This document shows, piece after piece, positions 5,701-48,065 of a DNA stretch of 64,000 bases; the stretch's first letter is position 1, and each line of letters opens with the position of its first letter. The stretch is from NCBI GenBank assembly GCA_038087875.1, contig JAXLNO010002870.1, positions 1-64,000 on the forward strand. The letters are read 5' to 3'. The translations under genes and the position numbers were made by a program. This DNA is from Malacoraja senta (lineage: Eukaryota). The notes beneath the pieces are model-generated. The model made no database searches. It was given only the letters and a program-made list of their open reading frames with translations, and had not been told where the DNA came from.

Positions 5701-5800
5701 AAAGACTGATCAATGGCAGATCAAATTATACACTGGCTAGATTTATTGCAAAAGACTGACCAATGGCAGATCAAACTATACACTGGCTAGATTATTGAAA
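5701..5800. repeat. Tandem duplication, two units of ~49 bp
   Basis: aaagactga(t/c)caatggcagatcaaa(t/c)tatacactggctagatt occurs twice and is mirrored in arm 2 at ~54850-54950. Confidence 0.85.
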
Positions 5801-15300: not shown

Positions 15301-15645
15301 GTTTCAATCTCCACACTGTGCATGGGCACAATAGGTGTGACTGTGCACAGCAGCTGATCTGCAGGGAGGTGTTTGGGGTGGTAGAGAGCTGCAGGAATTA
15401 GACAAAACAGTGGATAGAATGGAGGCAGTTCAAGACGAGATGCTTCCTCCGTGAACACCCCACCCCCCACCATTATCTCCTTCCACATAAATTCTCACTG
15501 TCTTTTTCCTTGTGCAGCAGCACTCTGGCTGATAGGAGAATGAATGAGCAAAATAATTAATTGGCTTCCTCCTACATTGTTCGACAAAGGCTTCCACTTC
15601 AGTTCTATCATTAGCTTTAAATGGACAACAAAATCTCATACTAAC

Positions 15646-15942
15646 CTTGAGGCTTCTGGAACTCCGTTCTCACCATGTTGTCCACCTTGCAGTAGTAGAC
15701 GTTTTTCTTGTTCCAATCTGCCACAGGGACTCGCAGCAAGCTGCTCATTGTGTACATGTTGTTTTGTCCCAACACAGGTGGGTACTTTGTGATTCCAGTG
15801 GTGATGTCCCCACTGCTGGTGGACCATGTCTGACTGATGATCTCAGGCTGGTAGTCCTTGACCAGATAGAGGATGCTGATCTCTTGGTCAGATTCTGTGT
15901 TGCAGGAAGAGGTGATGTGGACTGAAGGCAAGGTCTTAATCT
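15646..15942 (-). pseudogene. IgW/IgX CH1 exon with the first canonical Cys mutated to Tyr
   Basis: The 297 bp phase-1 exon runs from ttacttttcag to Ggttagt. It encodes IKTLPSVHITSSCNTESDQEISILYLVKDYQPE...QTWST...TKYPPVLGQNNMYTMSSLLRV..DWNKKNVYYCKVDNMVRTEFQKPQ, very close to skate IgX CH1 as recalled. TAT at 15866-15868 occupies the B-strand Cys position; the SC light-chain Cys is kept. Confidence 0.9.
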
Positions 15943-16782: not shown

Positions 16783-16993
16783 TGTAAAGACTGTCCTGGT
16801 CACATGGTGTCTTCACTCTAGTTTATTGCATACATTGTATTCGTATACACACATATTGCCCTAGCTGTTCGTGGTCCGTTACCGGAGCTAGAGAGCGAGC
16901 TAGGGGTGGGAAGGTTACATTTATACTGAAGCTAATGGGGAGTGGTTAGTAGAAGTGAGGTCACCATGTTAAAGGAACATGCACGGCTCTACA
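16783..16993 (-). repeat. Gypsy 3' LTR (211 bp)
   Basis: Identical by eye to 21185-21375 apart from a 20-bp segment; preceded on the minus strand by the polypurine tract. Confidence 0.95.
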
Positions 16994-19900: not shown

Positions 19901-21184
19901 GGCACGCACGGGCGCCCAACAGAGTAACATTCTCAGATTCCAGCAGGAGGAAAGAGAGGGGCCGAGAGGCCTTCAGAACTGAGCAGATAAGGGTGGCCTT
20001 GCCGACTGGGAATAGCATGCTCCCCCCATATGCACGGAGGCGGGAGTGATCAGCGGTAATGTTCTCACCAGCTCTTATCTGTTGAAAAAGACTTAACGAC
20101 ATAATATTCGTAAACGCCCCCGTATCTACCTTAGCAGAGAAGGTCATCCCATTCACAGTAACTCGAACTGATGGATCAGCTATCAAAGCATGTGCACCCA
20201 GGACTGAAAAAACAAGCGATTCATCATGGGAGGAGCTGTTATCAGAATCAGGGAGTTCGACTGGAAGGTATTCGGAGTCATAAACACTGTCAGTAGCAGT
20301 CAGGTTGTGTAGACTCTTTCTCGGAGCAGGGACAGGCTGGCCCCTGGAACGGCACGCTGCGGAGAAGTGATTAAGCTTCTTACACAAATTACAAGTCTTA
20401 CCCAGAGCAGGGCAAACATCAAATTGATGATTGACAAAGTTGCAGTTTGGGCATCGGCGAGGGTTGACCCTTGCAGGCGCAGGGGTGCTACGCTGGCGTG
20501 GCGGGCCATCGCGCCGCGGGCGTCCAGCAGCACCGGCATAGTTAATGTCCTCAGCTTCAGGGGGAGATATGGCGTCGACAGCAGCAGACATGCGAGAGGC
20601 ATGCAAAGCGTCGTTTAAAGTGAGGTCCGGCTTTCTCAGAAGCTCAGCCCGTAGCTTCACGTCCTGTAGACCGTGAACTAGGACATCTCTGATCAACTGA
20701 TCGGGGGTCAACGTCTCCAGGTGGCAACGCCGGGCCAGGTGACGCAGCGATGCCACGAAGGTATCGATGTGCTCCCCGGGTTTCTGGCGCCTGCTGAAAA
20801 ACTTGAACCGCTCTAGAATGGAGTTGGTGGGAATGTCACACAGCGCGGCAAATTTATTGATGAGACACACGGGGTCCTCTGCATTCTCACCATCGGCGTA
20901 CTCAAAAGATTCAGAACGTTCCATGGCCTCCGGGCCAGCCAGGTTGAGGAGCAGATGTGCTGTAATCGCAGGGGTAATATTAGGATGAGCGATGGCGACA
21001 TAGTGCTGGAAGTCGCGCCGGAAAATAGTCCACCGGTGGACGATGTCCGAGTCAAACACCAGAACGTCAGGCTTTCGACACGAGGTGGCCATAGTACATA
21101 AATAGTTGGAAAGGAAAATAAACACTTGGAGAAAAGAAAACAAACCCGATGAACAGGAGACGCAGGGTTAACTTCTTGACACCA

Positions 21185-21375
21185 TGTAAAGACTGTCCTG
21201 GTCACATGGTGTCTTCACTCTAGTTTATTGCATACATTGTATTCGTATACACACATATTGCCCTAGCTGTTCGTGGTCCGTTACCGGAGCTAGAGAGCGA
21301 GCTAGGGGTGGGAAGGTTACATTTATACTGAAGCTAATGGGGAGTGGTTAGTAGAAGTGAGGTCACGGCTCTACA
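21185..21375 (-). repeat. Gypsy 5' LTR (191 bp)
   Basis: Followed on the minus strand by the primer-binding site TGGTGTCAAGAAGT. Confidence 0.95.
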
Positions 21376-24800: not shown

Positions 24801-26559
24801 ACTGCAACTGGATTTACAAAATAAATAATAGATTCATTGAATCTCAGAGCACAGAACGGGGCCATTCATCTGATTGTGTCCGTACTTGTCCTTTAGCTGA
24901 GTTGGATGAATAATAGTGTGGTATTAGTGGGAGATTTAAACTTCCCTCATATTGACTGGGTATCCCACAATATTAAGTGCTAGGATGAGATAGAATTTGT
25001 TAACCGCATCTCAGAAAGATTCCTTAATCAACTCAAAGAGGGTTCTGCTGGAACCGCTATAGAGAATACAACACTAAACCTCCGCTTCAGATATGAGGCA
25101 AGGGATGAGATGTCAGTGTGGAAGCATTTTTAGACCAGTGACCATAGTTCTTCCAGTTTTAAACACAAAAAGCTAGAGTGCCTCTACAGGTCAGACAGCA
25201 TCTCTGGAGAAAAGGAATAGATGGTGTTTCAGGTCAAGACTCTTCTTCAGCCTGAGAGTCCTTTCCCCTGACTCTCAATCTGAAGGGTCTCGACCCTAAA
25301 TGTCACCGTTTCCCTCTCTCCAGAGATGCTGTTTGACCCGCTGAGTTATTCCAGCTTTTTGTATCTATATTCAGTTTAAACCAGCATCTGCAGTTACGTC
25401 CTACACCTCTACTAGTTTTAAAGTAGTTATCGAGAAGCATGAAACTGGCCCACAAATGAAGATCCTAACTGAGTTAAGGCTGATTTTGGAAGCATTGGTC
25501 TGGAACTTGCATAGTTTGTTTGGGAGAGTCTATTAGTGGTTAGGGGATGGCTGACATGTGGGAGGCTTTCAAAAGTGGGATAGCCAGAGTGCAGGGGCAG
25601 CTTATTAATGTTAGGGTGAAGGGCAAGTCTGGCACGTTCATGGAATCCTGGTTTTTGAGTGATGTTGAGTCTCTGGTCAGATAAAAGCAGGAGACATACC
25701 TCAGATTAAGGCTGTCGCGCTCAAGCGAATGCCTCAGTGGGTATAAGAAGCGTAGGAACACACTAAAGAATGCACTTGGGCAATAAAGAGGCCATGAAAT
25801 GGTTCTGACAGGCAAGGTCAAGGAAAACCCTAAGAGGGACTCTATAGTCAAATAACGATAAAGTAGTTTGGGGAAGAATAGGTCCCCTTAAAATTCAGAT
25901 CAGCATGGCCACCTTCGTGTAGATGCAAGAGATGGGCGAGATATTAAATGAATATTTCCTATCCGCAGTAACTAATGAGAAGATCATGGAAGCTAATGAG
26001 ATGAATCATAGGAGTTGTGATGTCTTAGATCATAACCAAATGACCAAAGAGGAGCTAATGGCAGCGTTCAAGTGCATTACGGTGGATAAATCCCCAGTGC
26101 CTTACAACTGCATCCTCTGATCTTGTGGGAAGCTCAGGAAAATAATTTACTTTCCGTCAGAGGTATTTACATCATCTTCCGCTGCAGATTAATCTCCAAA
26201 TGACTGGAGGGTGGCTGATACTGAAGTGTAATTGAAGAAGGACATTAGGGCCAAGCCAGGGATCTGCACCAGTGAGCCTGACGTCATTGGTGGGAATGTC
26301 CTTCATGACAGGAACTACCAGTATTTGGACAGGCACGGACTGATTAGGGATAGTCCTAAGTTTACACGAAGATCTAGATCACTTGGTAGGGTGGGCCAAG
26401 GATTAGGGACTGCATGGCTTGTGTTTGGGAAATTGTGCCTCATGAACCTGATAGGTCTGGCATGGTGGGCTGGCGTGGAAGGTTAGATCATATGAAACCC
26501 AACATGAGCTAAATTAGCTTGGAGAAAGTGGACTGCTGCAGGGGTCAGTGCTGAGACCA

Positions 26560-27205
26560 CTGTTGTTTGTTATCTACATTAAAATTTCTTGGCACTCACA
26601 TAAGCAATAACTTCAAATGGAAAATCAATTCAGATCACATTTATAAAAAAGCCAATCAAAGACTTTTCTTTCTCCGTCAGCTCAAGAAGTTCAGAGTGAG
26701 GAAACATCTCCTAATCCGATTTTACACAGCCATCATCCAAAGCATGCTCACTTCATCAATAACAGTTTGGTACAGCAGCTTAGACACTCACTCCCGTAAT
26801 AAACTACAGCGCATTGTCAACAAAGCATCCAAAATCATCAGCACCCCCTCCCATCAATAGATTCACTCAATCTCAAACGGTCTGTGTCAAGGGTGAAGAA
26901 AATCATTTCTAATCCCTCCCACCCAGCTCACCACATCTTCCACCTGCTGCCGTCAGGAAGGCGCTACAGCTCACTGCCCGCCAAAACATCACGATTTAAA
27001 AACAGTTTCTACCCATATGCAATTCGAACTCTGAACACTCTATGACAACATCACATAGCCACCTTGTGCATGTACTGTATACTGTATGTTGTTGTGTTTT
27101 ATGTTATGTTTGACGGGAATCAGCCTATTGTGTAACATCCTGTACTGAACATGAATTCCACCAGCTTGACTGTGTGGTCATTAAATAATCTGAATCTGAA
27201 TCTGA
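26560..27205 (+). mobile_element. Rex1/Babar-type LINE 3' fragment
   Basis: KFLGTHISNNFKW...KKANQRLFFLRQLKKF...FYTAIIQSMLTSSITVWY motif; (aatctg)n tail at ~27186-27205. Confidence 0.8.
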
Positions 27206-27906
27206 TTAACAGTTTGCCATACAATATAGTGGACATTGATAGTAAGTTTGCAGATGACACCAAAATCAGTGGACAGTGAGGAAGGATAAGTTTACCAAAA
27301 GATCTAGATCAGCTGGGAAGGTGAGCCAAGGAATGCCAAATGGAATTTAACTCTGACTTGTGAGGGGGTGTTGAACTTTGGTCGATCAAACCAGGGCTGG
27401 ACTTACACATTAAATGGTAGAGCCCGGAGAGTGTTGTAGAACAGACAGATGTGGAAATGCAGGGGCATGGTTCGCTGAGAGTGGCGAGTTAGGTGGACAG
27501 GGAGCTGGGGTGGCTTTTGGCAGACTGCCTTCAATAGGCAGTATCTGGAATGAGTTGCCAGAGGAAACTATAAAAGTAGATAGAATTCTTATTATCAAAC
27601 AAATCCGATATATGGATGAGAAGGATATGTGGCCAAAGGGACGAGCCCAGAAAACCAGCTTGGTCGGCATGCACAAGATAGATGATGGCGAGACTCAGGG
27701 AAAGAACAGCCTGTGGGGCAGTTCAACGCGGTGGGAAATGTACTGTTGCTGGGTAGATTCTAACTCTGCAGAAACCCGCCAGTCTCCGGGAAATCCGTGC
27801 AATTGTTCCAAATATCTCACCGAGTTCAGGTCAATTACAGAATTTCCAAAGACCATAAATTAATGAAACACAACTGGGTAAAATGGAATTGAGGAATTGG
27901 TCTTAC

Positions 27907-28237
27907 CTGAAGTCACTGTCAGCGAGGTTCCTGCACCCCAGTTGTCATCTCGCACAGTAATAGGTGGCCGTTGTAGTCCAGTCTCAGGCCGTTCATTTGG
28001 AGATAGACATTGCTGATGTCCTTGGAAACCTCGAATCGGCCGCTGAAGACAGGCGCGTAATTTTTGTCACCATTATACCTCATCCTCGCCACCCACTCCA
28101 GCCCTTTCCCGGAGACCTGTTTCACCCAGTGTAGCTGCTGAGGCTGAACCCGCTGGTTGCACAGGTCAGTTTGAGGGACCCTCCAGACTTTGCCACCCCG
28201 GTCGGGGTCTGATTCAGCACGACCGCGGATCGAACGC
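27907..28237 (-). pseudogene. Germline-joined IgW/IgX VH-JH exon, copy 1, frameshifted
   Basis: After the acceptor ttattggcag it reads GVRSAVVLNQTPTGVAKSGGSLKLTCATSGFSLSSY, then a frameshift, then WVKQVSGKGLEWVARMRYNGDKNYAPVFSGRFEVSKDISNVYLQMNGLRLD, then +1 nt, then TATYYCAR. This is fused directly to T-GAC-AAC-TGG-GGT-GCA-GGA-ACC-TCG-CTG-ACA-GTG-ACT-TCA-G/gtaaga (DNWGAGTSLTVTS). There is no RSS between V and J. Confidence 0.95.
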
Positions 28238-28338
28238 CTGCCAATAAAAGAGAAACAATGTTGAATAAAAAGTTGAAGAGGCAGAGGGTGAAAGAGTGTC
28301 CAAGAAGTAGCTCGGCCCCGAGTGGGGGTGACGCCCAC

Positions 28339-28384
28339 CTGGCAGACAGGACAGAAGGAGACAGAGATAAGCAGCGACCCCCAT
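28339..28384 (-). pseudogene. Ig VH leader exon, copy 1
   Basis: ATG GGG GTC GCT GCT TAT CTC TGT CTC CTT CTG TCC TGT CTG CCA G/gtgggc (MGVAAYLCLLLSCLP), followed by a 101-bp intron to the V exon. Confidence 0.92.
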
Positions 28385-28417
28385 CACTCTGAGCACTGAC
28401 ACACACTTGGACACTCC

Positions 28418-29866
28418 TTTTTTTTTAAATTTCAAAATATACTTTATTCAAGTAATAAATATATACAATACGTGAACCGTGCGAAAAATTAATCCGGCAT
28501 TTTCGGAGGCTATACAAATTGTCCAATGCAGTTAATACATTTTTTTTCAAATTCCACAAATCCGTCCCCCACCCGTGCCACTCATGTGGCCCCCTGGCGT
28601 GGGATACCTTCCCTTATTTTGAGGGGCGTCTCCACCATACCGTGCCCCCCATGTCCAGCAGCGGGAGGACCCTAGACTGTGGCCCTCCCCCATCGAGCCT
28701 TGGCGTTGGCTGCACCAAGCTTAAGTGCGTCCCGCAGCACGTACTCCTGCAGTCTGCAGCGGGCCAGTCGGCAACATTCCCTGACGGACATCTCGCTCTG
28801 CTGGGTGGTGAACAACGCTGGGGCAGACCAAATAGCGTCTTTCGCCGAGTTGATGACCTTCCAGCAGCATTCGATGTCAGTCTCTGAATGTGTCCCTGGG
28901 AACAGTCCGTAAATCACAGAGTCCTCTGTGACGGAGCTGTTCGGGATAAAGCGTGCCAGGGATCCCTGCATACTTCTCCAGATTCTTTTTGCAAATCCAC
29001 ACTCTGCGAAGAGGTGGGCAACCGTCTCCTCTCCATAGCAGCCGTCCCGTGCGCCGGCAGTGAGGTTCCCGACGGTGCAGGAAAGATCTGACTGGGAGGG
29101 CTCCCCTCACCGCTAGCCAAGCCAGGTCTTGGTGCTTGTTGGTGAGTTCTGGCGATGAGGCATTTTGCCAGACAAGCTGGGCAGTCTGCTCTGGGAACCA
29201 CGCCACCGGATCAATCGAGTCCTTTCCCTGCAGTGCCTGCAGGACGTTCCGTGCTGACCACTGCCCAATGGACATGTGGTCAAAGGTGTTGGTCCGGAAG
29301 AACCTTTCCACAGACGACAGATGGGGCAGCAATGTCCAGCTGACTGGCACATTGCGTGGCATCTGCGCCAGGCCCATCCTTCGCATCCTTTAGCAGGTAG
29401 TGACACTTGGTGCCCATGTGCCTTGGCTCTACACTCCGCCTGATGCAGCCACACACAAAGGTGGCCATCAGGGTGAGGGCGACGTTGGGCACGCTTTTAC
29501 CCCCGTTGTCTGCTGACTTGTACATTGTGGCCCGTCGCACCCGGTCTATCCTCGACCCCCAGATGAACTGGAAGGCGGCCCGGGTGATCCCTGTGGCGTA
29601 GGAGGGAGGGACAGGCCACACTTGCGCCAAGTACAGCAGCCCCGAGAGCACCTCACACGTGATGACCACATTTTTTCCGGTTATGGAGAGGAGCGTTGCC
29701 TCCACAGCTCCAGCTTCTTCCCCACCTTGACTATCCGCTCCAGCCAATTCTTGTTACACGCCTCAGCCCCCCCGAACCAGATCCCCAGCACCTTCAAGAA
29801 GTCAGGCTTGATGGTGAAGGGGACAGAAGTTCGGTCGGGCCAGTTGCCAAAGAGCATGGCCTCGCT
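28418..29866 (-). mobile_element. Tx1-type LINE 3' part (duplicated copy of 36890-38338)
   Basis: C-terminal ORF2 pieces, AATAAA and poly(A) (T-run at 28418-28426); cut off at the L1 junction. Confidence 0.9.
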
Positions 29867-30442
29867 ATGAAGTCAGAAATAGATAGTCTCAAGAACCAAG
29901 TCACAAAGGTTTCGAATAAATGTGTTGACCTAGAAGCTCGCTCAAGACGTCAAAATATAAGAATACGTGGTGTAAAAGAGGGAGCTGAGGGGGACAATGT
30001 TTGTGAGTTCGCTGCCAACCTAATTAAACACGTACTGAAGCTACCAGAAGTACCTGTAATTGAAGTAGCACATCGACTCCCCAGATTTAAATCAAGATCT
30101 CAAGGAGAACATGCCTACCCACGACAGATCATAATTAAACTTCGGGATATCTCAACAATGGAAGCGCTGATGAAAAAAATCAACCACGGAGAGAAGATGA
30201 TGTACAGAGGTGATACTATTAAACTCCTACGGGACTACCCTTATGAGATTGAGCAAAAGAGAAGAAAGTTCTCACAGACCAGAGAAGTTCTTTATGGTGT
30301 TAAGGGAGTTTTGTGTGGAGTGTTCTATCCGGCTAGAATGCGTATTACCTTTGAGGGAGTGTCAAAAACATTCACTAATTCGGATGAATCTCTCAAATAC
30401 GCTCAAGAAATCGCGACTAAGGCTGCATCAACTGGAGATTGA
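29867..30442 (+). pseudogene. L1 ORF1p C-terminal part (coiled-coil end, RRM, CTD)
   Basis: MKSEIDSLKNQV...DLEARSRRQNIRIRGVKEG...IEVAHRL...RQIIIKL...IKLLRDYP...FYPARMRITFEG is the typical L1 ORF1 signature. The upstream part of listed ORF 29696-30442 is antisense Tx1 read in frame by chance. Confidence 0.9.
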
Positions 30443-31660
30443 AAACCAAGACGACATGAACAAACGAACTTGCTTATTCTCCCAACAAGAGTATCACAAG
30501 GAAAGTGAATTAACTGAACACTGATTTTTTATTTTTTATTTGACTTCAAGCAACAGATTCTTAGTGAGACGTGGCTAGACATTATTATCTTCGCTGGAAC
30601 ATTGTGCTATGTAATTCAAGGACACTACGTGCTCAAACGAGGAAAACCTGATAACACGGGACGAACTGCTGGGCTGAGAGTGAAAAACATCACATGGCTT
30701 ATATTGTTTATAAAAAACTGAAAAAACTGAGAACTAATAATAATTAATAATTAACAATACTAATATAGAAATAGCAATTGAAATAGATAAAAAATGTGCA
30801 GCCTGCTCTGTTTAGCAGATAACAGCAAGTGCTATGCAGCTCGAGAGTGGAGGGAGGGGGAGACCGGGTACCTGGCATAACTCCAGGAGCCAGACTCCCG
30901 TTAACCCTTCCAGCGAACAGCTCATTTTTAACAATATTAAAACCAATTTAAAATAGTTAAGAGATAATATACACTCGAGGTTGGTATGAAAAATATATAC
31001 GGCTTATATAGTTTTACAAAATGCTGAGAATTAATCATAATTAATAATTAACAATACTAATATAGAAATAATATTTGAAACTGATAAAACTGTGGTGCCT
31101 GCATCATAACGCAGACAGCAGTTATCACATATGTTCGCAGCTCGTGGAGAGGAGAGGAGATCAGGCACCTGGCACAATTCCAGGAACCTGACTCCGGTTA
31201 ATCCACTCAGTAAACCGCTCACTTTAACAATACTAAATTCATTTTAAAATAGTTAAGAGATAAAGAGTGAGTAGGATATGGAATCGAATACATTTGACAT
31301 ATATATAAATTGTAACTGGGTGAAATAGAACTGAATTGGAAACGGTAATGACCCCATAGATTTTGGGTAATAAATACAGCAGGGCTAACTTTATACCAAC
31401 TACGCCGGAAGCATTATGGATGTCGTACCCCACAGACGAGTGGGCCACTCACTACGGTGTTGAAATTTTAGACACCGTAAATTTATTTGATTTATATATA
31501 TTTTTTTTAATCACAATATGTCACATCTGTGTGTTTTTTCTTCAAGGACAATCGCGCAGGAGAACTACCAAGGAAGTCTATAATAGAAATACTCCCAAAA
31601 TAACCAGAGTCCGGAGGTATGAACGCACCACAATAATTAAGGTCATTAAAACTGGTAAAA

Positions 31661-34600
31661 ATGCATGACGACAATCAAAAGAAAATAGGAGGAATCACAT
31701 TATGTAGTTGGAATATAAGGGGGATTAATGAACCTATTAAAAGGGGCAAGATACTAGCTCAGTTGAAATCATACAACACGGACATTGCGTTTCTACAGGA
31801 AACACATCTTAAACAGCAAGATCAGACAAGACTGAGGGCGAACTGGATAGGCCAAACATTTCACTCTTCATTTACCTCCAAATCTAGAGGTACTGCAATT
31901 ATTATTCGTAAAGGAATTCCATTTAAATCAAAGAACACTATTTTAGATAAGGAAGGGAGATATCTTATAGTAGCAGGGGAGATCAATAATATGCCAATTA
32001 CGCTGGTAAACATATATGCGCCCAACTTTGATAACCCTCAATTTTTTAATAAAATTCTGAATATAATTGCAGAATCTAATTATCAAAATGTTATAATCGG
32101 AGGAGATTTTAATTGTGTTTTAGATCCTTATTTAGATAAATCGATGCAAAAACAAAAAGGTCAGACGAAATCTAAAACCAGTGAACTCTTACACACATAT
32201 ATGGAAAACACAAATATAACAGATGTATGGAGGATTGCAAACCCGACGGGAAGGGATTACTCGTTTTATTCAATGGTGCATAAAACATATTCACGGATAG
32301 ACTATTTTCTTGTGGATACAAAATTAATTCCGCAATCTCTGAATCCTAAATATCATATTAATGCGATCTCAGATCATTCTCCGTTAACTTTTGTTCTAAA
32401 ACTAGAAGGAATGTCTATGAATAAACCGTTCTGGAGGTTTAACTCACAAATTTTAAAAGACCCTCAAGGGAGTATCTATCTAAAAAAACAGATGGATCTA
32501 TTTTTTTAGTTAAATGATACACCAGAGATATCCCCCACGTTATTATGGGAATCCTTCAAAGCATTTATAAGAGGAGTCATTATTTCATTTCAAGCTTATC
32601 AAAATAAAAAGAATAAGAATGAACAAAGACACTTAGAAGATCAAATAAAACAGTTAGATATAGATAATGCTAAAGACCCAACTATGGATAAACATAATAA
32701 AATACTACTACTGAAATTTCAGTTAAATAAATTACTGTCAGAGAAAGTTATAACATTATTTCAAATCACAAAACAAGAACACTTCGAATTCGGGGACAAA
32801 CCCCACAAACTTCTAGCACGACAACTTAAAAAACGGGAAAAAGAGAATGCAATATTAAAGATTAAATCAGATAGAGGGGAAGTATTAACACTACCCAAGG
32901 ATATTAATAAAAGATTTGCTCAATTTTACCAGAATCTATACACATCTAAAACGTCAATAGACAATAATAAAATCTCAGAATTTTTAGATAATTGTAATCT
33001 ACCACAATTAGAACGCAGGGAACAAGAGGAACTGGGAGCACAAATTACTTCTAAGGAGATAGAAGACACAATAAAAACACTAAAAAATGGAAAAACACCA
33101 GGACCAGACGGATTCAGTAATGAATTTTATAAATCTTTTTATGATATAGTTACTCCACGATTACAAAAAATGTATACATATGCTTATAAAGAGCAAAACC
33201 TACCTGAAACACTAGCGGAATCAACGATCATATTAATACTTAAAAAAGATAAAAATATAGAAGAACCAGGATCATATAGAGCTATTGCTTTGTTAAATAC
33301 GGATCAGAAAATAATAGCAAAAACATTAGCCAATAGATTAAGCAAGTATGTTAGTAGACTAATACATGAGGATCAAACAGGATTTATACCTAAGAGACAC
33401 TCATTTAATAATTTGAGACGTTTGCTTAACATAATGCATTCACATAAATCTTATGACCAAGAGTTAGCTATCATCTCACTGGACGCAGAAAAAGCGTTTG
33501 ATCAAGTAGAATGGGACTATATGATCAAAGTATTGCAAAAATTCCAATTGGGAGAAAACTTTATTGCATGGATAAAACTACTATATAACAAACCTACGGC
33601 TAGAATACTAACTAATAATATATTATCTTCAAAATTCGAATTATCTAGGGGCAACAGACAAGGATGTTCACTATCACCGCTGTTATTTGCTTTGGTAATT
33701 GAACCCCTTGCTGAAAAAATAAGAACACACTCGAATATTCACGGTTATAACACAAAATATTCAAACAACAAACTATCCCTATATGCTGATGATGTACTAC
33801 TGTACATCACAAAACCACAAATTAGTATACCAAATATATTAAACTTAATTGAGGACTTTGGATCCTTTTCAGGATATAGAATAAATTGGAACAAAAGTGA
33901 AATTATGTCGATTAAACCAAAAGACTCAACACATCTCAGGAAATTCCCTTTTAAAATAGCTATGGAAAAATTCAAATATTTAGGAATTGAGATTACTAGA
34001 AATTACCATGATATGTTTAAAGCTAATTATAATCCCCTACTTAAGAAATTAAATAATTTGATTAAATTTTGGAAAACACTTCCGATGTCCTTAATAGGTA
34101 GGATAAATGCTATAAAAATGATTTTCTTACCACAAATCCTTTACCTATTTCAATCAATACCTATATATCTCCCAAAAAAGTTTTTCAAAAAACTGGACTC
34201 AGACATTACAAATTTTATATGGGATTACAAATCCCACAGAATACAAAGAACACACCTTAACAAACGAAAAGAGTTGGGGGGTCTAGCGCTCCCTAACTTT
34301 ATGTATTATAACTGGGCAGTAAATATTAAAAATATGATTCACCTGCTGGACAATTCTGCCCAGCAGGTGGACTGGATTATAATGGAAAAAGGGGATTGCT
34401 CCCCGAATAATATAGGAGCGATTATTCTCTCTCCAATAAATTTGAATAATAAAAATTATAATAAAAATCCAATTATATATAGCACTATTAGAACATGGAA
34501 GCAAATAAAACAGAATCTAAAATTAAGAAACCTATCTCTCTTAATACCAATAGTCAATAACCCATCGTTTAAACCTTCAATCATAGATAAATCATTTATA

Positions 34601-35452
34601 CAATGGGAAAGAATGGGAATCAAAACGCTCGAAGATCTGTATGAATTAGAAAAATTACTATCATTCCAACAACTACAACTGAAATATAATTTGAAAAATA
34701 ATCAATATTTTAAATATCTACAAATCTGTGACTATTTGAAAACACACACAAAAGATTATTATAATATGCCTTCCGACTTACTAGATGAAGCAATGAAGAC
34801 AAAGGCGGAATCAGTTAATTTAATATCATACTTATATAATATCATCTTAAACATAGAAATACCCACAACAGATGGAATTAGAAGAGATTGGGAACAAGAT
34901 CTAGGTATAAAAATTTCAAAAGAGAGTTGGGATAATCATTTATTACAGGTGCATAAATGCTCGATCAACGTACGACATACGCTTATCCAATTTAAAACAT
35001 TACATAGATTATATTATTCAAAAACCAAACTAAATAAAATCTTTCCTAACCTCTCACCAATCTGTGATAAATGTATATGTCAAGAAGCTACCATAGCACA
35101 TTCTTTTGTTTTTTGTACAAAAATCCAAAAATTCTGGTTTGAAATATTTGATATTTTTTCAAAATTAATCAAAATAAAACTGGTACCAAAACCAGAATGG
35201 ATTATTTTTGGAATATCGGAAGGTATTCCTGAATTAAACGTGTATCAGAAGAATTTACTCAATTATGGGCTAATAATGGGAAAAAAGCTTATACTTAAAT
35301 TCTGGAAAAATGCGCCCACACCAACAATAAAAATGTGGACATCAAATATGTTGGAAACATTACATCGGGAAGAGATGAGATTCCTCCTAGTAGGCAAAGT
35401 AGACCAATTTCAAAAGACGTGGTCTACGTTTTTGGACCTATTACAAGCATGA
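31661..35452 (+). pseudogene. L1 ORF2p (APE endonuclease, RT, C-terminal Cys-rich domain) with a single in-frame stop
   Basis: ORFs 31661-32509 and 32684-35452 share a frame (offset 1023). The only lesion is TAG at 32507-32509 (FF*LNDT, probably from GAG). Motifs: SWNIRG, FLQETH, GGDFN, SRIDY, SDHS, QGCSLSP, YADD and the CDKC...HSFVFC knuckle. Confidence 0.95.
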
Positions 35453-36381
35453 GGTGCAATAGTAATTTAGAAAAACAAATAAATAAATAAAAGGTATCTG
35501 GACCTGGTAATGGGAGGTAAAACAAAAACAGACTTGGTTGGTAGTTCCTTCTCTATGAAGTATGTTATAAGAGTTATAATAGAGCGATTGCTCCGTCTTT
35601 CTTTCTCTTTCTTTTCTAGGGTCTATTTTCTAACTTTACTTCCTTCTCTAACTTCTTTTCTAAGGGGCTTTCTTTTCCCAACACTCTTTTGCACTTCACA
35701 ACCTTTGCGCACTTTCTTCACTTTTCTTACTTCTTTCTTTTTCTTTCTTAAAGTTTAAAAAAGTGAAGCGGTACAAAAAATGTATTAATATATACGTGTT
35801 GTACATTACTGTAATCTACCATACTTCTATTAAAAAAATTATTAAAAAAAAAAAAAAAAAAAAACCCAGGGCTGGACTTACACATTAAATGGTAGAGCCC
35901 GGAGAGTGTTGTAGAACAGACAGACGTGGAAATGCAGGGGCATGGTTCGCTGAGAGTGGCGAGTTAGGTGGACAGGGAGCTGGGGTGGCTTTTGGCAGAC
36001 TGCCTTCAATAGGCAGTATCTGGAATGAGTTGCCAGAGGAAACTATAAAAGTAGATAGAATTCTTATTATCAAACAAATCCGATATATGGATGAGAAGGA
36101 TATGTGGCCAAAGGGACGAGCCCAGAAAACCAGCTTGGTCGGCATGCACAAGATAGATGATGGCGAGACTCAGGGAAAGAACAGCCTGTGGGGCAGTTCA
36201 ACGCGGTGGGAAATGTACTGTTGCTGGGTAGATTCTAACTCTGCAGAAACCCGCCAGTCTCCGGGAAATCCGTGCAATTGTTCCAAATATCTCACCGAGT
36301 TCAGGTCAATTACAGAATTTCCAAAGACCATAAATTAATGAAACACAACTGGGTAAAATGGAATTGAGGAATTGGTCTTAC

Positions 36382-36712
36382 CTGAAGTCACTGTCAGCGA
36401 GGTTCCTGCACCCCAGTTGTCATCTCGCACAGTAATAGGTGGCCGTTGTAGTCCAGTCTCAGGCCGTTCATTTGGAGATAGACATTGCTGATGTCCTTGG
36501 AAACCTCGAATCGGCCGCTGAAGACAGGCGCGTAATTTTTGTCACCATTATACCTCATCCTCGCCACCCACTCCAGCCCTTTCCCGGAGACCTGTTTCAC
36601 CCAGTGTAGCTGCTGAGGCTGAACCCGCTGGTTGCACAGGTCAGTTTGAGGGACCCTCCAGACTTTGCCACCCCGGTCGGGGTCTGATTCAGCACGACCG
36701 CGGATCGAACGC
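36382..36712 (-). pseudogene. Germline-joined IgW/IgX VH-JH exon, copy 2, frameshifted
   Basis: Same sequence, same two frameshifts and same AGA-T-GAC-AAC-TGG junction as copy 1. Confidence 0.95.
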
Positions 36713-36813
36713 CTGCCAATAAAAGAGAAACAATGTTGAATAAAAAGTTGAAGAGGCAGAGGGTGAAAGAGTGTCCAAGAAGTAGCTCGGCCCCGAGTGG
36801 GGGTGACGCCCAC

Positions 36814-36856
36814 CTGGCAGACAGGACAGGAGACAGAGATAAGCAGCGACCCCCAT
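36814..36856 (-). pseudogene. Ig VH leader exon, copy 2 (one Leu codon shorter)
   Basis: MGVAAYLCLLSCLP-G/gtgggc; 43 bp versus 46 bp in copy 1. Confidence 0.92.
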
Positions 36857-36889
36857 CACTCTGAGCACTGACACACACTTGGACACTCC

Positions 36890-39800
36890 TTTTTTTTTTA
36901 ATTTCAAAATATACTTTATTCAAGTAATAAATATATACAATACGTGAACCGTGCGAAAAATTAATCCGGCATTTTCGGAGGCTATACAAATTGTCCAATG
37001 CAGTTAATACATTTTTTTTCAAATTCCACAAATCCGTCCCCCACCCGTGCCACTCATGTGGCCCCCTGGCGTGGGATACCTTCCCTTATTTTGAGGGGCG
37101 TCTCCACCATACCGTGCCCCCCATGTCCAGCAGCGGGAGGACCCTAGACTGTGGCCCTCCCCCATCGAGCCTTGGCGTTGGCTGCACCAAGCTTAAGTGC
37201 GTCCCGCAGCACGTACTTCTGCAGTCTGCAGCGGGCCAGTCGGCAACATTCCCTGACGGACATCTCGCTCTGCTGGGTGGTGAACAACGCTGGGGCAGAC
37301 CAAATAGCGTCTTTCGCCGAGTTGATGACCTTCCAGCAGCATTCGATGTCAGTCTCTGAATGTGTCCCTGGGAACAGTCCGTAAATCACAGAGTCCTCTG
37401 TGACGGAGCTGTTCGGGATAAAGCGTGCCAGGGATCCCTGCATACTTCTCCAGATTCTTTTTGCAAATCCACACTCTGCGAAGAGGTGGGCAACCGTCTC
37501 CTCTCCATAGCAGCCGTCCCGTGCGCTGGCAGTGAGGTTCCCGACGGTGCAGGAAAGATCTGACTGGGAGGGCTCCCCTCACCGCTAGCCAAGCCAGGTC
37601 TTGGTGCTTGTTGGTGAGTTCTGGCGATGAGGCATTTTGCCAGACAAGCTGGGCAGTCTGCTCTGGGAACCACGCCACCGGATCAATCGAGTCCTTTCCC
37701 TGCAGTGCCTGCAGGACGTTCCGTGCTGACCACTGCCCAATGGACATGTGGTCAAAGGTGTTGGTCCGGAAGAACCTTTCCACAGACGACAGATGGGGCA
37801 GCAATGTCCAGCTGACTGGCACATTGCGTGGCATCTGTGCCCGGCCCATCCTTCGCATCCTTTAGCAGGTAGTGACACTTGGTGCCCATGTGCCTTGGCT
37901 CTACACTCCGCCTGATGCAGCCACACACAAAGGTGGCCATCAGGGTGAGGGCGACGTTGGGCACGCTTTTACCCCCGTTGTCTGCTGACTTGTACATTGT
38001 GGCCCGTCGCACCCGGTCTATCCTCGACCCCCAGATGAACTGGAAGGCGGCCCGGGTGATCCCTGTGGCGTAGGAGGGAGGGACAGGCCACACTTGCGCC
38101 AAGTACAGCAGCCCCGAGAGCACCTCACACGTGATGACCACATTTTTTCCGGTTATGGAGAGGAGCGTTGCCTCCACAGCTCCAGCTTCTTCCCCACCTT
38201 GACTATCCGCTCCAGCCAATTCTTGTTACACGCCTCAGCCCCCCCGAACCAGATCCCCAGCACCTTCAAGAAGTCAGGCTTGATGGTGAAGGGGACAGAA
38301 GTTCGGTCGGGCCAGTTGCCAAAGAGCATGGCCTCGCTCTTCCTGCGGTTCACCCTGGCTCCCGTGGCCGACTCAAACTGGTCGCAGATACTAATCAGTC
38401 TGCGGACCGACCCTGGATCCGAGCAGAAGACAGCGACATCGTCCATGTACAGGGAAATTTTGACGAATGCCCCCACTGCTTGGCAATGTCACTCCTCTTA
38501 TGCTCGCATATTCCTGATGGACTCGGCAAAAGGTTCAATACAGCAGATAAACAAGACAGGAGAGAGAGGGCACCCCTGCCTGACTCCAGACCTTACAGGG
38601 AAACTGTCTGATTCCCACCCATTGATTTGGACTGCACTACGGATATTGGTGTAGAGCAGTTTGATCCAATTTCGGATTCCCTCCCCAAAACCCATTTTGG
38701 AGAGCACGTCCCTCATGAACGTGTGCGATATCCTGTCGAAGGCCTTCTCCTGGTCCAAGCTGACTAGGCAGGCATCCACCCGTCTGTCCTGCACGTAGGC
38801 GATGGTATCTCTCAGCAGCAGGTACAGCACAGGTTTGTGTTGGATCACCTGTCCCAGAGCTGACTTGACCCGGTTGGCGATGGCCTTAAACAGGATCTTG
38901 TAATCTACATTCAACAATGTGATGGGTCTCCAATTCTTTATATCCTTCATCTCCCCCTTCTGCTTGTAGATTAGGGTGATGCTGCCATTCCTCATGGAGT
39001 CTGACATGCTGCTGGCTAGAAGCATGTCGTTGTACACTTCCAACAGGTCCGGGCCCACCCAGTCCCACAGAGCCGAATACAACTCGGCCGGTAAGCCATC
39101 GCTTCCGGGAGTTTTACTCGAGTCAAAGGAATGGATGGAGCCAGTCAGCTCCTCTAGGGTCAGTGGTTGGTCCAGACTCTCCCGCTTGCTGTTCTCCAAG
39201 ACCTCCGTGATAGAGGACAGGAAGTTCTGGGAGGCGGTGCTGTCTGTGGCCTTTTTGTCGTACAAATCCGTGTAAAAGGATTTGCAGATCCTCAGCATGT
39301 CCGTCTGCGAGGATGTTACCGAGCCATCCTCTTTCCTAAGGCTGTTCATCACAGCTTCCCCTGTGAACCTTATGGAAGAAGAAACGTGAGCACGTCTCAT
39401 CCTGCTGCACATGGCGGACCCTGGATCGGATGATCTTGGAGGATTCAGACGTAAAGAGCCGAGCTTGCCGGTCCTTCACCTCTCTAAGTTCCTCCCTCAC
39501 ATCCACCCCTCTCGACTGCAGAAGGAGCAGTTGTTGCAAATCTGTCTGGAGTTGGCACAATTCCCTCTGACTCTGTCTTGCTCTCTGAACCCCTTTAACT
39601 ATGAAGAACCTCTTAATGTTCTCCTTGGTTGCTTCCCACCAGCGTGTCGGGGAGTCAAAGAGGGGCCTCACCGTTCTCCAACATGCGTAGTCCCTCTTTA
39701 GCTCCTCAACGTTCTCTGGGGTCAACAGCTTCATATTTAACTTCCACGTCCCCCTGCCTGCCTTCCGGTCCTCCTGTAGGTGACAGAAAGCCCGAAGGAG

Positions 39801-42180
39801 GCAGTGGTCAGAGAAGAACACCGGCGTGAGGTCGGTGTGTCTCACCGTGACGGCCTTCGTCGTGAAGATGAATTCTATCCGGGGTCGGGCTAAACCGTCC
39901 GATCTCGACCAGGTGAAATGCAGCTGGGACCTGCCTGCAGGGTTGCTGAAGGCGTCGTGCAGCTTTGCGTCTTTTACCGTCTCCATGAGGAACTTGGACG
40001 TGCTGTCCAGTCTGTTGTCGGCACTGCCGGATCGTCCAGCCGCATCGATGATGCAGTTGAAGTCACCGGCCAGAACGAGCTGCCGGGACGTGGCCAGCAG
40101 CGATGGGAGCTGCTGGAGAACGGCCAGCCGCTCGCTCTGCACGGGTGAGGTATACACATTAATCAGCTGGAGCGTAGAACCACGGTACATAACATCCACC
40201 ACGGGGAGACGGCCCCCAACCACCTCCCTGACCTCAGCGATGGCGAAGTTCCCTCCCCGCAGCAAGATCCCCAGGCCGGAATCGCAACAGTCATTGCCCC
40301 CCGACCACACCGACAGTCCGTGGGGCCACCATCGCGACCACCTCCGATAGCAGCGGAGGTGCGGCAGCCCGCACTCGTGGGGAAAAGTCACATCTGCCTT
40401 GACGTTGGCCAGGTACTGCAAGGCATTTACACATCGCCCAGTGCTCTTTATACTGCGCACGTTTAAAGATGCCAGTTTTATCTCCATTGTCTTTAGAGTC
40501 ACTGACCATTCTCGTGTCCCCTCATGCCCACCGCTTCGGTGAATTGCCTCAGCTTTCCTGGGCTCAGGAACCCAGTGCCGGCATCCTCAATGAGGTGGGT
40601 TTCCTGTGGCGTAACCCAAGGTGTCGTTGGGAGGGGCCTACTCGTTCCACCCACTTCAGGGCGCGCTGCTTCCTCCGTAGCTGGGGTACGGTGGCTGGTT
40701 CACTGCTCCTGCAAGCCCGGGGTTGGGGCCCATCGGCCGCTGCGATGATCCCGGTCTCCAGGGGCTGGAGCCCCTCGGCCTCTGCACTGCTTCCGATGTC
40801 CTGGCGCTGGAGCCCCTCGGCCGCTGCTCTGCTCTCGGTCTCCTGGGGCTGGGGGATGATTGGCGTGGCCTTTCTCTTTTCCTCCCCTGTTTTCTTCCTC
40901 TGCCTCCATCGTTGGGACTTCCCGGTCGCCTCATCCTCCAACGAGGAGAGGTTGCTGCCTTCTGTCAGGGAGAAAGATCTTTTTTGGGATTTATTTTTGG
41001 ACTTACCAGCCCTTTCCGACCTCGGCTCTTTCGGCTGAACCCTCTGGTGCTTCTTGTACATCACCGTCGTCCATTTCTCCTGCTGTCCCCCCTCCTCCAT
41101 CGACTCTCCCTCCTGGGCAGGGTGATGGGGGTCTCCTTCCGGCACTTGGGGGCTCGAGGTGGTCGGGCTGTCCTCGTCCCTGTTCCCCCTTTCTGCTGCA
41201 GTCTTGGCAATGGTGAGGGGTGTCTCACCCACCCTGGGGGTGCTGGCAGCAGCCCCTCTTGTCGCCTGTGCATAGGTGCAGGCTCTTTTAGGGCAGGCCC
41301 TGTAAAGGTGGCCTGCCTCCCCACACAGGTTGCAGTTCTTGCTGGCCTGACAGTCCTTTGACAACTGCAGTGCATTGGACCATCACATGCCCAGGCTTGT
41401 TGCATTTCCTGCACAGCCTGGGTTGCCCCGTGTAGCTCATGTACCCTCGGTTCCCTCTGATAGCGAACAACGAGGGAGGGTGGATGATGGCTCCGTTCTT
41501 GTCCACCCTCAGCTTCACCTTCACTTGCCGCTTGCTCGTCCAGATCCCGTACAGGTCCTTTATGTCCACACAGTTCCCTGCTCCCTCGACATGACGAGCA
41601 AGGAAGGTGAGGACATCCACTACGGGCACATGTGGGTTGAACATGTGCAACGTGATCATCCTTTCCTTCTGGGTGGGGGGGATGAAGAGCGGCAGCGGAG
41701 CTTCATTCCCCTTCTCCCGGAAGTCTTCCATCAACTTTTGCCATCCCGTCGGATACTTGAAGGTAACATCAATGTATCCATTACCCGGGAACTCCTGGAG
41801 GCAGTAGATGTCCTTGGCCTCAAATTTGCAGGCCTCTAGCAAGACCTTCTTCATGAACAGGTCCCGTGAGAAGGGAACCCCCTTGCTGAGGTCCTTAACG
41901 CTGATTCTCAGGGTATTGCGGATACCCTGTACTCCCGCTCCAGTTGCTGCTGCCATTGTGGCTGAATGAGGTGTTAGGTTGGTTGCCCAACCAGCATGGA
42001 TCCACCTCTAAGCCCGCAGCCGACCGACTCCTCGTCACTGATTCTGCTCCGCGGTCCACGGCCCTTGTCCCCAAGGGGCCGCCAGAACTGTTCTAATAAG
42101 AACAGAGAGTCTCTTTTACTCAAATACTCGTCCTGGGAGAACCTCCTTGGTGATCAAGGTTTCTCCCCTGCCAGGTGTAC
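36890..42180 (-). mobile_element. Tx1-clade non-LTR retrotransposon, near full length, multiple frameshifts
   Basis: ORF1 starts at 41956 (ZCCHC3-like, HMFNP motif, CCHC knuckles CRKCNKPGH and CNLCGEAGHLYRAC). ORF2 starts at 40502 (SLNVRSI, AGDFNC, FFSDH endonuclease; WRPITLLNVDYKIL, SLDQEKAFDRI, GVRQGCPLSP, LYMDD RT) and ends at ~37144, followed by AATAAA and poly(A) at 36890-36899. Confidence 0.95.
42127..42180 (-). ncRNA. U1 snRNA-derived segment (nt ~7-56, stem-loop I) forming the Tx1 5' head; not a complete U1 gene
   Basis: The minus strand reads ACCTGGCAGGGGAGAAACCTTGATCACCAAGGAGGTTCTCCCAGGACGAG. Vertebrate U1 nt 7-56 as recalled is ACCTGGCAGGGGAGATACCATGATCACGAAGGTGGTTTTCCCAGGGCGAG, giving 44/50 identity. 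Stem-loops II-IV and the Sm site are absent. Confidence 0.85.
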
Positions 42181-46500: not shown

Positions 46501-48065
46501 GGAAGGATACTTAAAGATAATATATATAAGCATCTGGATAAGCAGGGTCTGATTAGGAACAGTCAACATGGATTTGTGCCTGGAAGGTCATGCTTGACTA
46601 ATCTTCTTGAATTTTTCGAAGAGGTTACTAGGGAAATTGATGAGGGTAAAGCAGTGGATGTTGTCTATATGGACTTCAGTAAGGCCTTTGACAAGGTTCC
46701 TCATGGAAGGTTGGTTAAGAAGATTCAATTGTTGGGTATTAATGGTGGAGTAGCAAGATGGATTCAACAGTGGCTGAATGGGAGATGCCAGAGAGTAATG
46801 GTGGATGGCTGTTTGTCAGGTTGGAGGCCGGTGACTAGTGGGGTGCCTCAGGGGTCTGTGTTGGGTCCACTGTTGTTTGTCATGTACATCAATGATCTGG
46901 ATGATGGTGTGGAAAATTGGATTAGTAAGTATGCAGATGATACTAAGATAGGTGGTGTTGTGGATAATGAAGTAGATTTTCAAAGTCTACAGAGAGATTT
47001 AGGCCATTTGGAAGAGTGGGCTGAAAGATGGCAGATGGAGTTTAATGCTGACAAATGTGAGGTGCTACATCTCGGCAGGACAAATCAAAATAGGACGTAC
47101 ACGGTAAATGGTAGCGAATTGAGGAATGCAGTTGAACAGAGCGATCTAGGAATAACTGCGCATAGTTCCCTGAAGGTGGAATCTCATGTAGATAGGGTGG
47201 TAAAGAAAGCTTTTGGTGTGCTGGCCTTTATAAATCAGAGCATTGAATATAGAAGTTGGGATGTAATGTTAAAATTGTGCAAGGCATTCGTGAGGCCAAT
47301 TCTGGAGTATGGAGTACAATTTTGGTCGCCTAATTATAGGAAGGATGTCAACAAAATAGAGAGACTACAGAGGAGATTTACTAGAATGTTGCCTGGGTTT
47401 CAGCAACTAAGTTACAGAGATAGGTTGAACAAGTTAGGTCTTTATTCTTTGGAGCGCAGAAGGTTAAGAGTGGACTTAATAGAGGTCTTTAAAATTATGA
47501 GCGGGTTAGACAGAGTGGACGTGGATAAGCTTTTCCCATTGAGAGTAGGGAAGATTCAAACAAGGGGACATGACTTGAGAATTAAGGAACAGAAGTGTGG
47601 AATAGCTGTGTGGAATGAGCTTCCAGTGGAAGTGGTGGAGGCAGGTTCGATGTTATCCTTTAAAAATAGATTGGATGGGTATATGGACGGGAAAGGAATG
47701 GAGGGTTTTGGTCTGAGTGCAGGTAGATGGGACTAGGGGGAAGTATTTATTTTTAATTTTTAAAAAAAAATTTAAAAAAAATGTTCGGCACGGACTTGAA
47801 GGGCCGAGATGGCCTGTTTCCGTGCTGTTATGGTTATATGGTTATATGGAATGAGCTTCCAGTGGAAGTGGTGGAGGCAGGTTCGATTTTATCCTTTAAA
47901 AATAGATTGGATGGGGATATGGACGGGAAAGGAATGGAGGGTTATGGTCTGAGTGCAGGTACTCTAGATGGGACTAGGGGGAAGACAGAAGGAAAAAAAA
48001 ATGTTCGGCACGGACTTGAAGGGCCGAGATGGCCTGTTTCCGTGCTGTAATGGTTATATGGTTAT
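43535..48065 (+). mobile_element. CR1 host copy (43535-44742 plus 47847-48065) split by a nested CR1
   Basis: The host sequence gtagctgtgtggaa / tgagcttccagtgg rejoins across the insert. It carries the same 5-bp insertions as the 13205-15300 copy. Confidence 0.85.
44743..47846 (+). mobile_element. Nested CR1 LINE with ORF1 C-terminus and nearly complete ORF2
   Basis: It begins with GLHLNPRGTNILAGRFAKATGETLN* (end of the CR1 ORF1 esterase domain). Endonuclease 45007-45501, one stop, then RT 45511-47736; (tggttata)n tail; flanked by tggaa on both sides. Confidence 0.9.

What the first reader, a model, noticed from the sequence alone, without database searches (positions are those of the whole stretch)
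27391..38338. L1 insertion flanked by a ~2.48 kb 'target-site duplication' that copied an immunoglobulin V-J gene
Seen: the layout is repeat A (27391-29866), then a 5'-truncated L1 ending in A21 (29867-35864), then repeat B (35866-38338). Copy B starts exactly at the end of the poly(A), at a site reading ATC/AAACCAGG in copy A, an A-run compatible with poly(A) priming. Copy A ends exactly where L1 begins, and only copy B continues into the interrupted Tx1. Established: this is the geometry of target-primed reverse transcription, but L1 TSDs are normally about 7-20 bp. Inference: second-strand cleavage ~2.5 kb away, or break repair during integration, duplicated a leader-V-J unit. That would be a retrotransposition route to Ig V-gene duplication with no RNA copy of the Ig gene. 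The copies differ at only a few sites and ORF2 has a single stop, so the event is recent.
Basis: partly seen in the sequence, partly recalled or inferred. Interest (0 to 1): 0.8.

Follow-up and report, generated by a model that had tools for sequence, protein, structure and literature searches.

The report
L1 insertion with 2.5-kb target duplication
In a skate genome a young L1 jumping gene sits exactly between two near-identical 2.5-kb copies of its insertion site, so one insertion event duplicated the DNA at the target, including an already dead antibody heavy-chain V-J pseudogene; such kb-scale duplications are known from human cell cultures and tumours but are rarely seen fixed in a germline.

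Summary
Copy A (27388-29866) and copy B (35862-38338) are 99.6% identical, differing by 6 substitutions and 2 small indels. They abut the two ends of a 5,998-bp, 5'-truncated, poly(A)-ended L1 (29867-35864).

The window itself shows the pre-insertion state. The flank|A boundary lies inside an old L2/CR1-like RT reading frame that runs on across it. The B|right-flank boundary lies inside the RT domain of an older minus-strand LINE that also runs on across it. So the ancestral sequence held one copy and no L1.

The poly(A) abuts a 5'-GTTT/GATC-3' bottom-strand site. The best reading is target-primed reverse transcription, completed at a top-strand break about 2.48 kb away: a giant target-site duplication.

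Caveats:
- The copied "Ig V-J gene" is a VH-J pseudogene with at least 3 frame changes and a stop, identical in both copies.
- kb-scale L1 TSDs are documented in cultured cells and tumours.
- Public reads could not validate the assembly.

The scan found this before on other DNA. Unchecked scan notes list at least 17 further L1 insertions with 0.1-2.4-kb TSDs in this genome, which hints at a lineage-wide trait.

The parts
27388..29866 (.). Copy A of the duplicated target (2,479 bp). It is contiguous with the ancestral left flank and ends exactly at the first L1 base.
   Evidence: continuity with the left flank
29867..35864 (+). 5'-truncated L1 (5,998 bp). ORF1 C-terminal part 29867-30439; non-coding spacer 30440-31660; ORF2 31661-35452 (EN 31661-32509, in-frame stop at codon 283, RT 32684-35452); 3' UTR with ATTAAA; A21 tail 35844-35864.
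35862..38338 (.). Copy B of the duplicated target (2,477 bp). It starts at the poly(A) and is contiguous with the ancestral right flank.
27905..28384 (-). Germline-joined VH-J pseudogene in copy A. Leader, FR1, FR2-FR3, YYCAR and J lie in different frames, with TGA at the joint.
   Evidence: FR2-FR3 piece matches antibody heavy chains
36380..36856 (-). The same VH-J pseudogene in copy B. V and J are identical to copy A; the leader is one codon shorter.
28418..29866 (-). 3' 1.45 kb of the older minus-strand LINE carried in copy A. Its T9 run is the element's poly(A) and abuts the Ig leader region.
36890..42180 (-). The older minus-strand L1-superfamily (Tx1-like) LINE, whole only through copy B. 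RT 38498-39412, EN 39336-40502, CCHC ORF1 40564-41364, U1-like head about 42125-42180.
27205..27650 (+). Old L2/CR1-like RT remnant (FADD ... FGRSNQG ... LNGR) whose reading frame crosses the flank|A boundary at 27387/27388.

Best explanation
A single L1 retrotransposition event in the germline created both the L1 insert and the second copy of a 2.48-kb stretch. What the sequence shows: the bottom strand was nicked at 5'-GTTT/GATC-3' (between 27387 and 27388). The T-ended 3'-OH paired with the L1 poly(A) and primed reverse transcription of about 6 kb of L1 RNA, stopping inside ORF1. This gives the poly(A)|copy B junction. What is inferred: the cDNA end was not joined to a top-strand nick 7-20 bp downstream. 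It was joined to a top-strand break 2,479 bp downstream, inside the RT-coding part of an older LINE, which gives the copy A|L1 junction. The 2.48 kb lying between the two staggered breaks was then filled in on both sides, leaving it as a direct repeat: a giant TSD. How the distant end arose cannot be told from the sequence. Candidates are an unrelated nick, break-induced or fork-associated replication from the reciprocal end, or the cDNA bridging to a break on the sister chromatid. The passenger DNA was part of an old L2-like remnant, about 250 bp of intron, a dead VH-J pseudogene, and the 3' 1.45 kb of the older LINE. No RNA copy of the Ig unit was involved.
For: The repeat exactly abuts both L1 ends. 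Both outer boundaries fall inside older TE reading frames that continue across them, so flank-X-flank with one X was ancestral. The L1 has an A21 tail and an ATTAAA signal, and the target begins with AAA after GATC, a T-rich EN-like site. GTTT/g is among the cleavage sites listed for human L1 inserts with kb-scale TSDs in PMC5223499. The L1 is young: one stop in 1263 ORF2 codons. The copies differ by 0.24%, and half the substitutions are at CpG. Both facts fit one recent event. There is precedent. TSDs up to 5-6.7 kb occur in NER-deficient human cells and above 100 bp in under 10% of HeLa events (PMC5223499). Tandem duplications of 1-10 kb are read as large TSDs in tumours and L1-induced clones (bioRxiv 10.1101/2024.12.14.628481). 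A sister-chromatid bridging model exists (PMC7058536). Unchecked scan notes list at least 17 other L1 insertions with 98 bp-2.4 kb TSDs in the same genome.
Against: No read-level confirmation was obtained. Only short Logan contigs from other individuals or paralogues could be laid, and no indexed run held the A|L1 junction 61-mer, although only 3 sampled words were tested. The top-strand break site (CGCT/CTTC) does not look like an L1 endonuclease site. Microhomology at the 5' junction could not be assessed without a full-length family member. The support from other windows rests on unchecked AI notes.
Confidence: 0.8

Rival explanations
1. Assembly artefact. A false tandem duplication was produced by stitching haplotypes or collapsing two separate L1 copies.
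For: The 0.24% difference between the copies, two of the changes in or beside homopolymer runs, is in the range of allelic differences. No independent reads confirmed either junction.
Against: An assembler cannot invent the two junctions. Both are needed, and they join positions 2.48 kb apart in exact TPRT geometry. Explaining them away needs two same-family L1 insertions 2.5 kb apart plus several haplotype switches. There are no N runs in the window. The same pattern is noted at many other L1 copies in this genome (unchecked).
Confidence: 0.07
2. An older tandem duplication arose by another mechanism, and an L1 later landed exactly on its A|B junction with a 0-3 bp TSD.
For: A junction reading GCT|AAACC would offer a GTTT/AG bottom-strand site. 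The final sequence would be indistinguishable from what is seen.
Against: It needs an L1 to hit one particular nucleotide of the genome. There is no separate short TSD. The low A/B divergence and the near-intact L1 give no sign of two events of different age. It cannot explain a recurrent pattern, if the scan notes hold.
Confidence: 0.05
3. Endonuclease-independent capture. An L1 cDNA was used as filler while a replication- or break-associated tandem duplication was being repaired.
For: The top-strand break is not EN-like. Tumour studies propose break-induced replication for such 1-10 kb duplications.
Against: EN-independent inserts typically lack a poly(A) primed at a T-rich site and are often 3'-truncated. 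Here an A21 tail abuts AAA at a GTTT/G site. This rival overlaps with the inferred second half of the best explanation.
Confidence: 0.08

Closest known systems
Large (over 100 bp to about 6.7 kb) TSDs of engineered human L1 in cultured cells, frequent in NER-deficient cells (Servant et al. 2017, PMC5223499; it cites Gilbert 2002/2005 and Symer 2002 for HeLa)
   Same: The L1 insert carries a poly(A) at a T-rich nick and is flanked by a kb-scale direct duplication of the target. The inserts are mostly 5'-truncated. A distal nick is proposed as the second break.
   Different: Those are somatic events of a marked human element in cell lines, most of them in repair-deficient backgrounds. This one is a natural germline event of a fish-type L1 (about 50% identical to the best database ORF2) in a skate.
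L1-mediated 1-10 kb tandem duplications and larger duplications in tumours and L1-induced clones (bioRxiv 10.1101/2024.12.14.628481; Rodriguez-Martin et al. 2020, PMC7058536)
   Same: A tandem duplication with a polyadenylated L1 at the junction and an EN-like motif at the 3' breakpoint. These authors explicitly regard such cases as large TSDs.
   Different: Those are somatic and cancer-associated, and most were not resolved to full sequence. Here both copies and the complete 6-kb insert are sequence-resolved in a germline assembly.
LINE families with characteristically long natural TSDs: Dualen in Chlamydomonas (median 900 bp) and rDNA-specific R9 in rotifers (126 bp) (PMC9977147, which cites Gladyshev and Arkhipova 2009)
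   Same: Germline or heritable LINE insertions flanked by target duplications of hundreds of bp or more. If the scan notes hold, the length would be a family trait here too.
   Different: Those are different LINE clades with RLE or dual endonucleases. Here it is an APE-type L1-clade element in a vertebrate.
Canonical human germline L1/Alu/SVA insertions (most TSDs 10-20 bp, median 21 bp; PMC12350158)
   Same: The order 5' TSD, element, poly(A), 3' TSD, and a 5'-truncated, dead-on-arrival copy.
   Different: The TSD here is about two orders of magnitude longer.

Membership tests
L1-clade LINE | APE-type endonuclease followed by a reverse transcriptase in one ORF2, colinear with mammalian ORF2p | tested here: met
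   Pfam Exo_endo_phos (E 4e-20) and RVT_1 (E 2e-41). Human ORF2p residues 338-1244 matched at E 9e-129. EN and RT lie in the same frame.
L1-clade LINE | ORF1p of the coiled-coil/RRM/CTD type | tested here: met
   The 191-aa ORF1 remnant matches human L1 ORF1p at E 6e-5. Pfam gave no hit, so the match is weak.
L1-clade LINE | 3' poly(A) tail after a polyadenylation signal | tested here: met
   ATTAAA followed by A21 at 35844-35864.
TPRT insertion with target-site duplication | Direct repeat of target DNA abutting both ends of the element, with the 3' copy directly after the poly(A) | tested here: met
TPRT insertion with target-site duplication | Single-copy, element-free ancestral site | tested here: met
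   Shown indirectly. Older TE reading frames are continuous across flank|A and across B|flank. No empty allele from another animal was obtained.
TPRT insertion with target-site duplication | T-rich endonuclease site at the first-strand nick (consensus 5'-TTTT/AA-3') | tested here: inconclusive
   The site reads 5'-GTTT/GATC-3'. This is a degenerate variant. The preference of this skate L1 family is unknown.
TPRT insertion with target-site duplication | TSD length of about 7-20 bp | tested here: not met
   The TSD is 2,479 bp. This places the event in the 'large TSD' variant class.
Tx1 clade (the older minus-strand LINE) | Phylogenetic placement of RT/EN with Tx1-type elements and target-specific insertion | not tested
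   Only APE EN, RT (31% identical to the L1 RT), a CCHC knuckle in ORF1 and a U1-like 5' head were seen. The Atlas look-up was uninformative.
Functional immunoglobulin heavy-chain V gene | Open leader-V-J reading frame with a promoter | tested here: not met
   FR1, FR2-FR3, YYCAR and J lie in different frames, with TGA at the joint. A LINE poly(A) lies 33 nt upstream of the ATG. VH identity itself is met.

The most novel reading that the evidence does not exclude
This event is the long tail of a lineage-wide habit. The young L1 family of this skate would routinely complete integration at a distant second-strand break, giving germline TSDs of 0.1-2.5 kb. It would then act as a regular DNA-level duplicator of exons, genes and regulatory DNA. 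It would also be a natural system for studying how the second strand is cut in L1 integration.
Probability: 0.45. Interest if true: 0.75.

Novelty: new member of a known kind. Interest (0 to 1): 0.55.

Why it matters
How L1 integration is completed (second-strand cleavage and joining) is still poorly understood. kb-scale TSDs have so far been tied mostly to repair-deficient cultured cells and to tumours. A fully sequence-resolved germline case in a cartilaginous fish shows that the outcome survives in nature, and that it can copy a whole gene-sized unit with its introns and flanks without an RNA intermediate. If the many similar notes from this genome hold, the skate L1 family would be a natural model for long-TSD integration. 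It would also be an overlooked source of small segmental duplications in multigene regions such as the Ig clusters. For immunology this particular copy matters little, because the V-J unit was already dead.

Tried and rejected
- **Read validation.** The look-up of sequencing runs was busy at first. It then listed only Logan contig sets, the best holding 0.62 of the words. Laying four runs on 24900-30400 gave short contigs, mostly 2-6% different, from other animals or from paralogous or TE copies. Among the rows shown, none bridged 29866/29867, and no informative loose ends appeared at 27388 or 29866. A 61-mer centred on the A|L1 junction found no listed run, but only 3 sampled words were tested. 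All of this is inconclusive and is not evidence against the structure.
- **Other copies of the L1 family**, wanted to test TSD lengths and 5' microhomology. The best database ORF2 is only 52-53% identical, and the exact ORF is not on record. No public collection offered here holds the rest of this genome.
- **Rfam** on the whole window gave no hit at gathering score.
- **Pfam** on the L1 ORF1 remnant gave no hit.
- **Atlas look-up** to label the older LINE as Tx1 was uninformative.
- **Literature** on long TSDs of L1 in skates, sharks or other non-mammalian vertebrates: nothing found.
- **Readings rejected.**
  - 5' or 3' transduction would need an insert beginning with the very sequence that follows the target.
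  - Unequal crossing-over between two L1 copies would leave L1 copies outside the repeat as well.
  - RAG or RSS involvement is not supported: there is no heptamer at either break.
Full report
**Observation**

A self-comparison of the window finds a single long direct repeat, 27388-29866 against 35862-38338. It has 2480 aligned columns, 99.6% identity, 6 mismatches and 2 gaps. There are no N runs in the window.

The four junctions were read directly:

| Junction | Sequence |
|---|---|
| left flank / copy A | GATC / AAACCAGGG |
| copy A / insert | GGCCTCGCT / ATGAAGTC |
| insert / copy B | A21 followed by CCCAGGG |
| copy B / right flank | GGCCTCGCT / CTTCCTGCGG |

The two copies differ as follows:
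- Six substitutions at 27450, 28427, 28746, 29055, 29366 and 29370. Three of them are CpG transitions.
- One C-run length difference at the very start.
- One 3-nt indel at 28353-28355.

**The insert is an L1**

- ORF2 (31661-35452) carries an APE-type endonuclease and a reverse transcriptase.
- Its RT-containing part (32684-35449) is colinear with human L1 ORF2p residues 338-1244 (E 9e-129).
- It has one in-frame stop, at codon 283 of 1263.
- The first 191 codons of the insert are the C-terminal part of an ORF1p and match human ORF1p weakly (E 6e-5; no Pfam hit). The element is therefore truncated inside ORF1.
- It ends in ATTAAA followed by A21.
- The nearest ORF2 proteins in the large protein collection are only 52-53% identical, and the named hits come from teleosts.

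**What was duplicated**

Read on the minus strand, the 2.48-kb unit holds three things in order: the 3' 1.45 kb of an older LINE, an Ig leader-V-J unit, and about 500 bp of the J-C intron.

The older LINE:
- Its RT is 31% identical to that of the L1.
- It has an APE endonuclease and a CCHC knuckle in ORF1.
- Its poly(A) lies 33 nt upstream of the Ig ATG.

The start of the intron stretch belongs to an old plus-strand L2/CR1-like RT remnant.

The V part is heavy-chain type. Its FR2-FR3 piece matches antibody heavy chains at residues 34-90 (E down to 4.5e-32). The joint reads YYCAR followed by TGA, and the J reads WGAGTSLTVTS.

The unit is a pseudogene:
- Leader, FR1, FR2-FR3, YYCAR and J lie in different frames.
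- All these defects are identical in both copies, so the gene was dead before it was copied.
- The LINE sits where the promoter should be.

One C1-set exon lies about 12 kb downstream at 15641-15931 on the minus strand. TE insertions, including an LTR-type element, fill the interval. The isotype was not determined.

**Ancestral state**

The window itself supplies the empty-site evidence.

- The flank|A boundary (27387/27388) falls inside the old L2/CR1-like RT reading frame, within the FGRSNQG...LNGR block. A tblastx chain against another copy of that family at 46888-47196 runs colinearly across the boundary.
- The B|right-flank boundary (38338/38339) falls inside the RT domain of the older LINE. 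The tblastn alignment 39358-38252 runs across it.

So left flank, one copy of X and right flank were contiguous before the event. Only the A|L1 and poly(A)|B junctions are new.

**Mechanism**

The layout is that of target-primed reverse transcription.

1. The duplicated stretch begins with AAA after GATC, so the bottom strand reads 5'-GTTT/GATC-3'. This is a degenerate L1-endonuclease-type site whose T-ended 3'-OH can pair with the poly(A). GTTT/g is listed among the cleavage sites of human L1 inserts with kb-scale TSDs (PMC5223499).
2. First-strand synthesis from that primer explains the poly(A)|B junction.
3. The cDNA end was joined to a top-strand end 2,479 bp downstream (CGCT/CTTC, which is not endonuclease-like). 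This explains the A|L1 junction.
4. Filling in the staggered 2.48 kb produces the direct repeat.

Steps 1 and 2 and the geometry are what the sequence shows. How the distant top-strand end arose is inference. The options are an unrelated nick as proposed by Servant et al. [quoted passage not shown]

The 0.24% divergence between the copies and the near-intact ORF2 both point to a recent event. I give no absolute date because I have no calibrated rate for skates.

**Rivals**

- *Assembly artefact.* This would have to invent two junctions that join points 2.48 kb apart in exact TPRT geometry. The only contrived route needs two same-family L1 insertions plus several haplotype switches. I put it near 0.07, mainly because no reads could be checked.
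- *A pre-existing tandem duplication hit later by an L1 exactly at its junction.* This gives the same sequence but needs a one-nucleotide coincidence (about 0.05).
- *Endonuclease-independent capture of L1 cDNA during a break-repair duplication.* The intact A21 tail at a T-rich site argues against it (about 0.08), and it shades into the inferred second half of the main model.
- *Rejected on geometry.* Transduction, L1-L1 unequal crossing-over and RSS-related breaks.

**Read evidence: inconclusive**

- Only Logan contig sets were available, the best holding 0.62 of the sampled words.
- Laid on 24900-30400, they gave short contigs, mostly 2-6% different. These come from other animals, paralogous clusters or other TE copies.
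- None of the rows shown bridges 29866/29867.
- A 61-mer across that junction was listed in no run, on only 3 sampled words.

**Comparison with what is known**

- Most human germline insertions have TSDs of 10-20 bp (median 21 bp; PMC12350158).
- TSDs above 100 bp occur in under 10% of HeLa events. They reach 5-6.7 kb in NER-deficient cells, where the median is about 1.5 kb (PMC5223499).
- L1-bearing tandem duplications of 1-10 kb in tumours and L1-induced clones are explicitly called large TSDs.
- Among natural heritable LINE insertions, the long TSDs I found described are 126 bp for rotifer R9 and a median of 900 bp for Chlamydomonas Dualen (PMC9977147).
- I found no paper on long L1 TSDs in cartilaginous or other non-mammalian vertebrates.

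The event is therefore a new natural member of a known kind, not a new mechanism.

**Lead from the scan's own notes (unchecked)**

The scan found the same pattern before on other DNA of this genome. First readers flagged at least 17 other L1 insertions with direct duplications of 98, 130, 244, 247, 314, 378, 387, 498, 502, about 700, 784 and 871 bp, 1.2 kb (twice) and about 2.4 kb. One of them was followed up as a full-length L1 with a 314-bp TSD.

I could not reach those windows. If the notes hold, long TSDs are a trait of this skate L1 lineage. That would be the really interesting result. It would also dispose of the coincidence and artefact rivals.

**Verdict**

The immunological significance is low because the copied gene was already dead. 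Interest is moderate for this single case and higher for the possible family-wide trait.

Noticed in passing
window 42125-42180 (minus strand), 5' end of the older LINE: The first 55 nt or so of the older minus-strand LINE read like the 5' end of U1 snRNA (ACCTGGCAGGGGAGA...GATCAC..AAGG.GGTT.TCCCAGG). The likeness is recalled from memory. Rfam gave no hit at gathering score.
   Followed up: partly
window 16783-21366: An LTR-type retroelement sits in the J-C interval. On the minus strand it carries protease-like, RT, RNase H and integrase ORFs (17098-19098, 19125-21143), bracketed by two 100% identical 182-bp direct repeats (16783-16964, 21185-21366). This suggests a very young insertion.
   Followed up: partly
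window 1055-6269 vs 54385-59615; exons at 4456-5004 (-) and 55633-56181 (+): A 5.2-kb inverted duplication (96.5% identical) carries an Ig C1-set exon in each arm (E about 1e-20). A further C1-set exon lies at 15641-15931 (-). The window is therefore part of an Ig cluster region with inverted paralogues.
   Followed up: partly
window 26578-27204: A 627-bp LINE 3' fragment ending in (ATCTGA)n is nested in the old L2/CR1-like RT remnant. Contigs from all four runs laid join 26577 directly to 27205 with 5 shared nt. They probably come from other copies of the host TE family that lack the nested insert.
   Followed up: no
window 30440-31660: The L1 has an unusually long (about 1.2 kb) non-coding spacer between ORF1 and ORF2, with a dispersed internal repeat. 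Tandem Repeats Finder found no tandem array.
   Followed up: no
window 28353-28355 vs 36827/36828: The only difference between the two Ig pseudogene copies is an in-frame 3-nt indel in the leader exon (LCLLLSC vs LCLLSC).
   Followed up: yes
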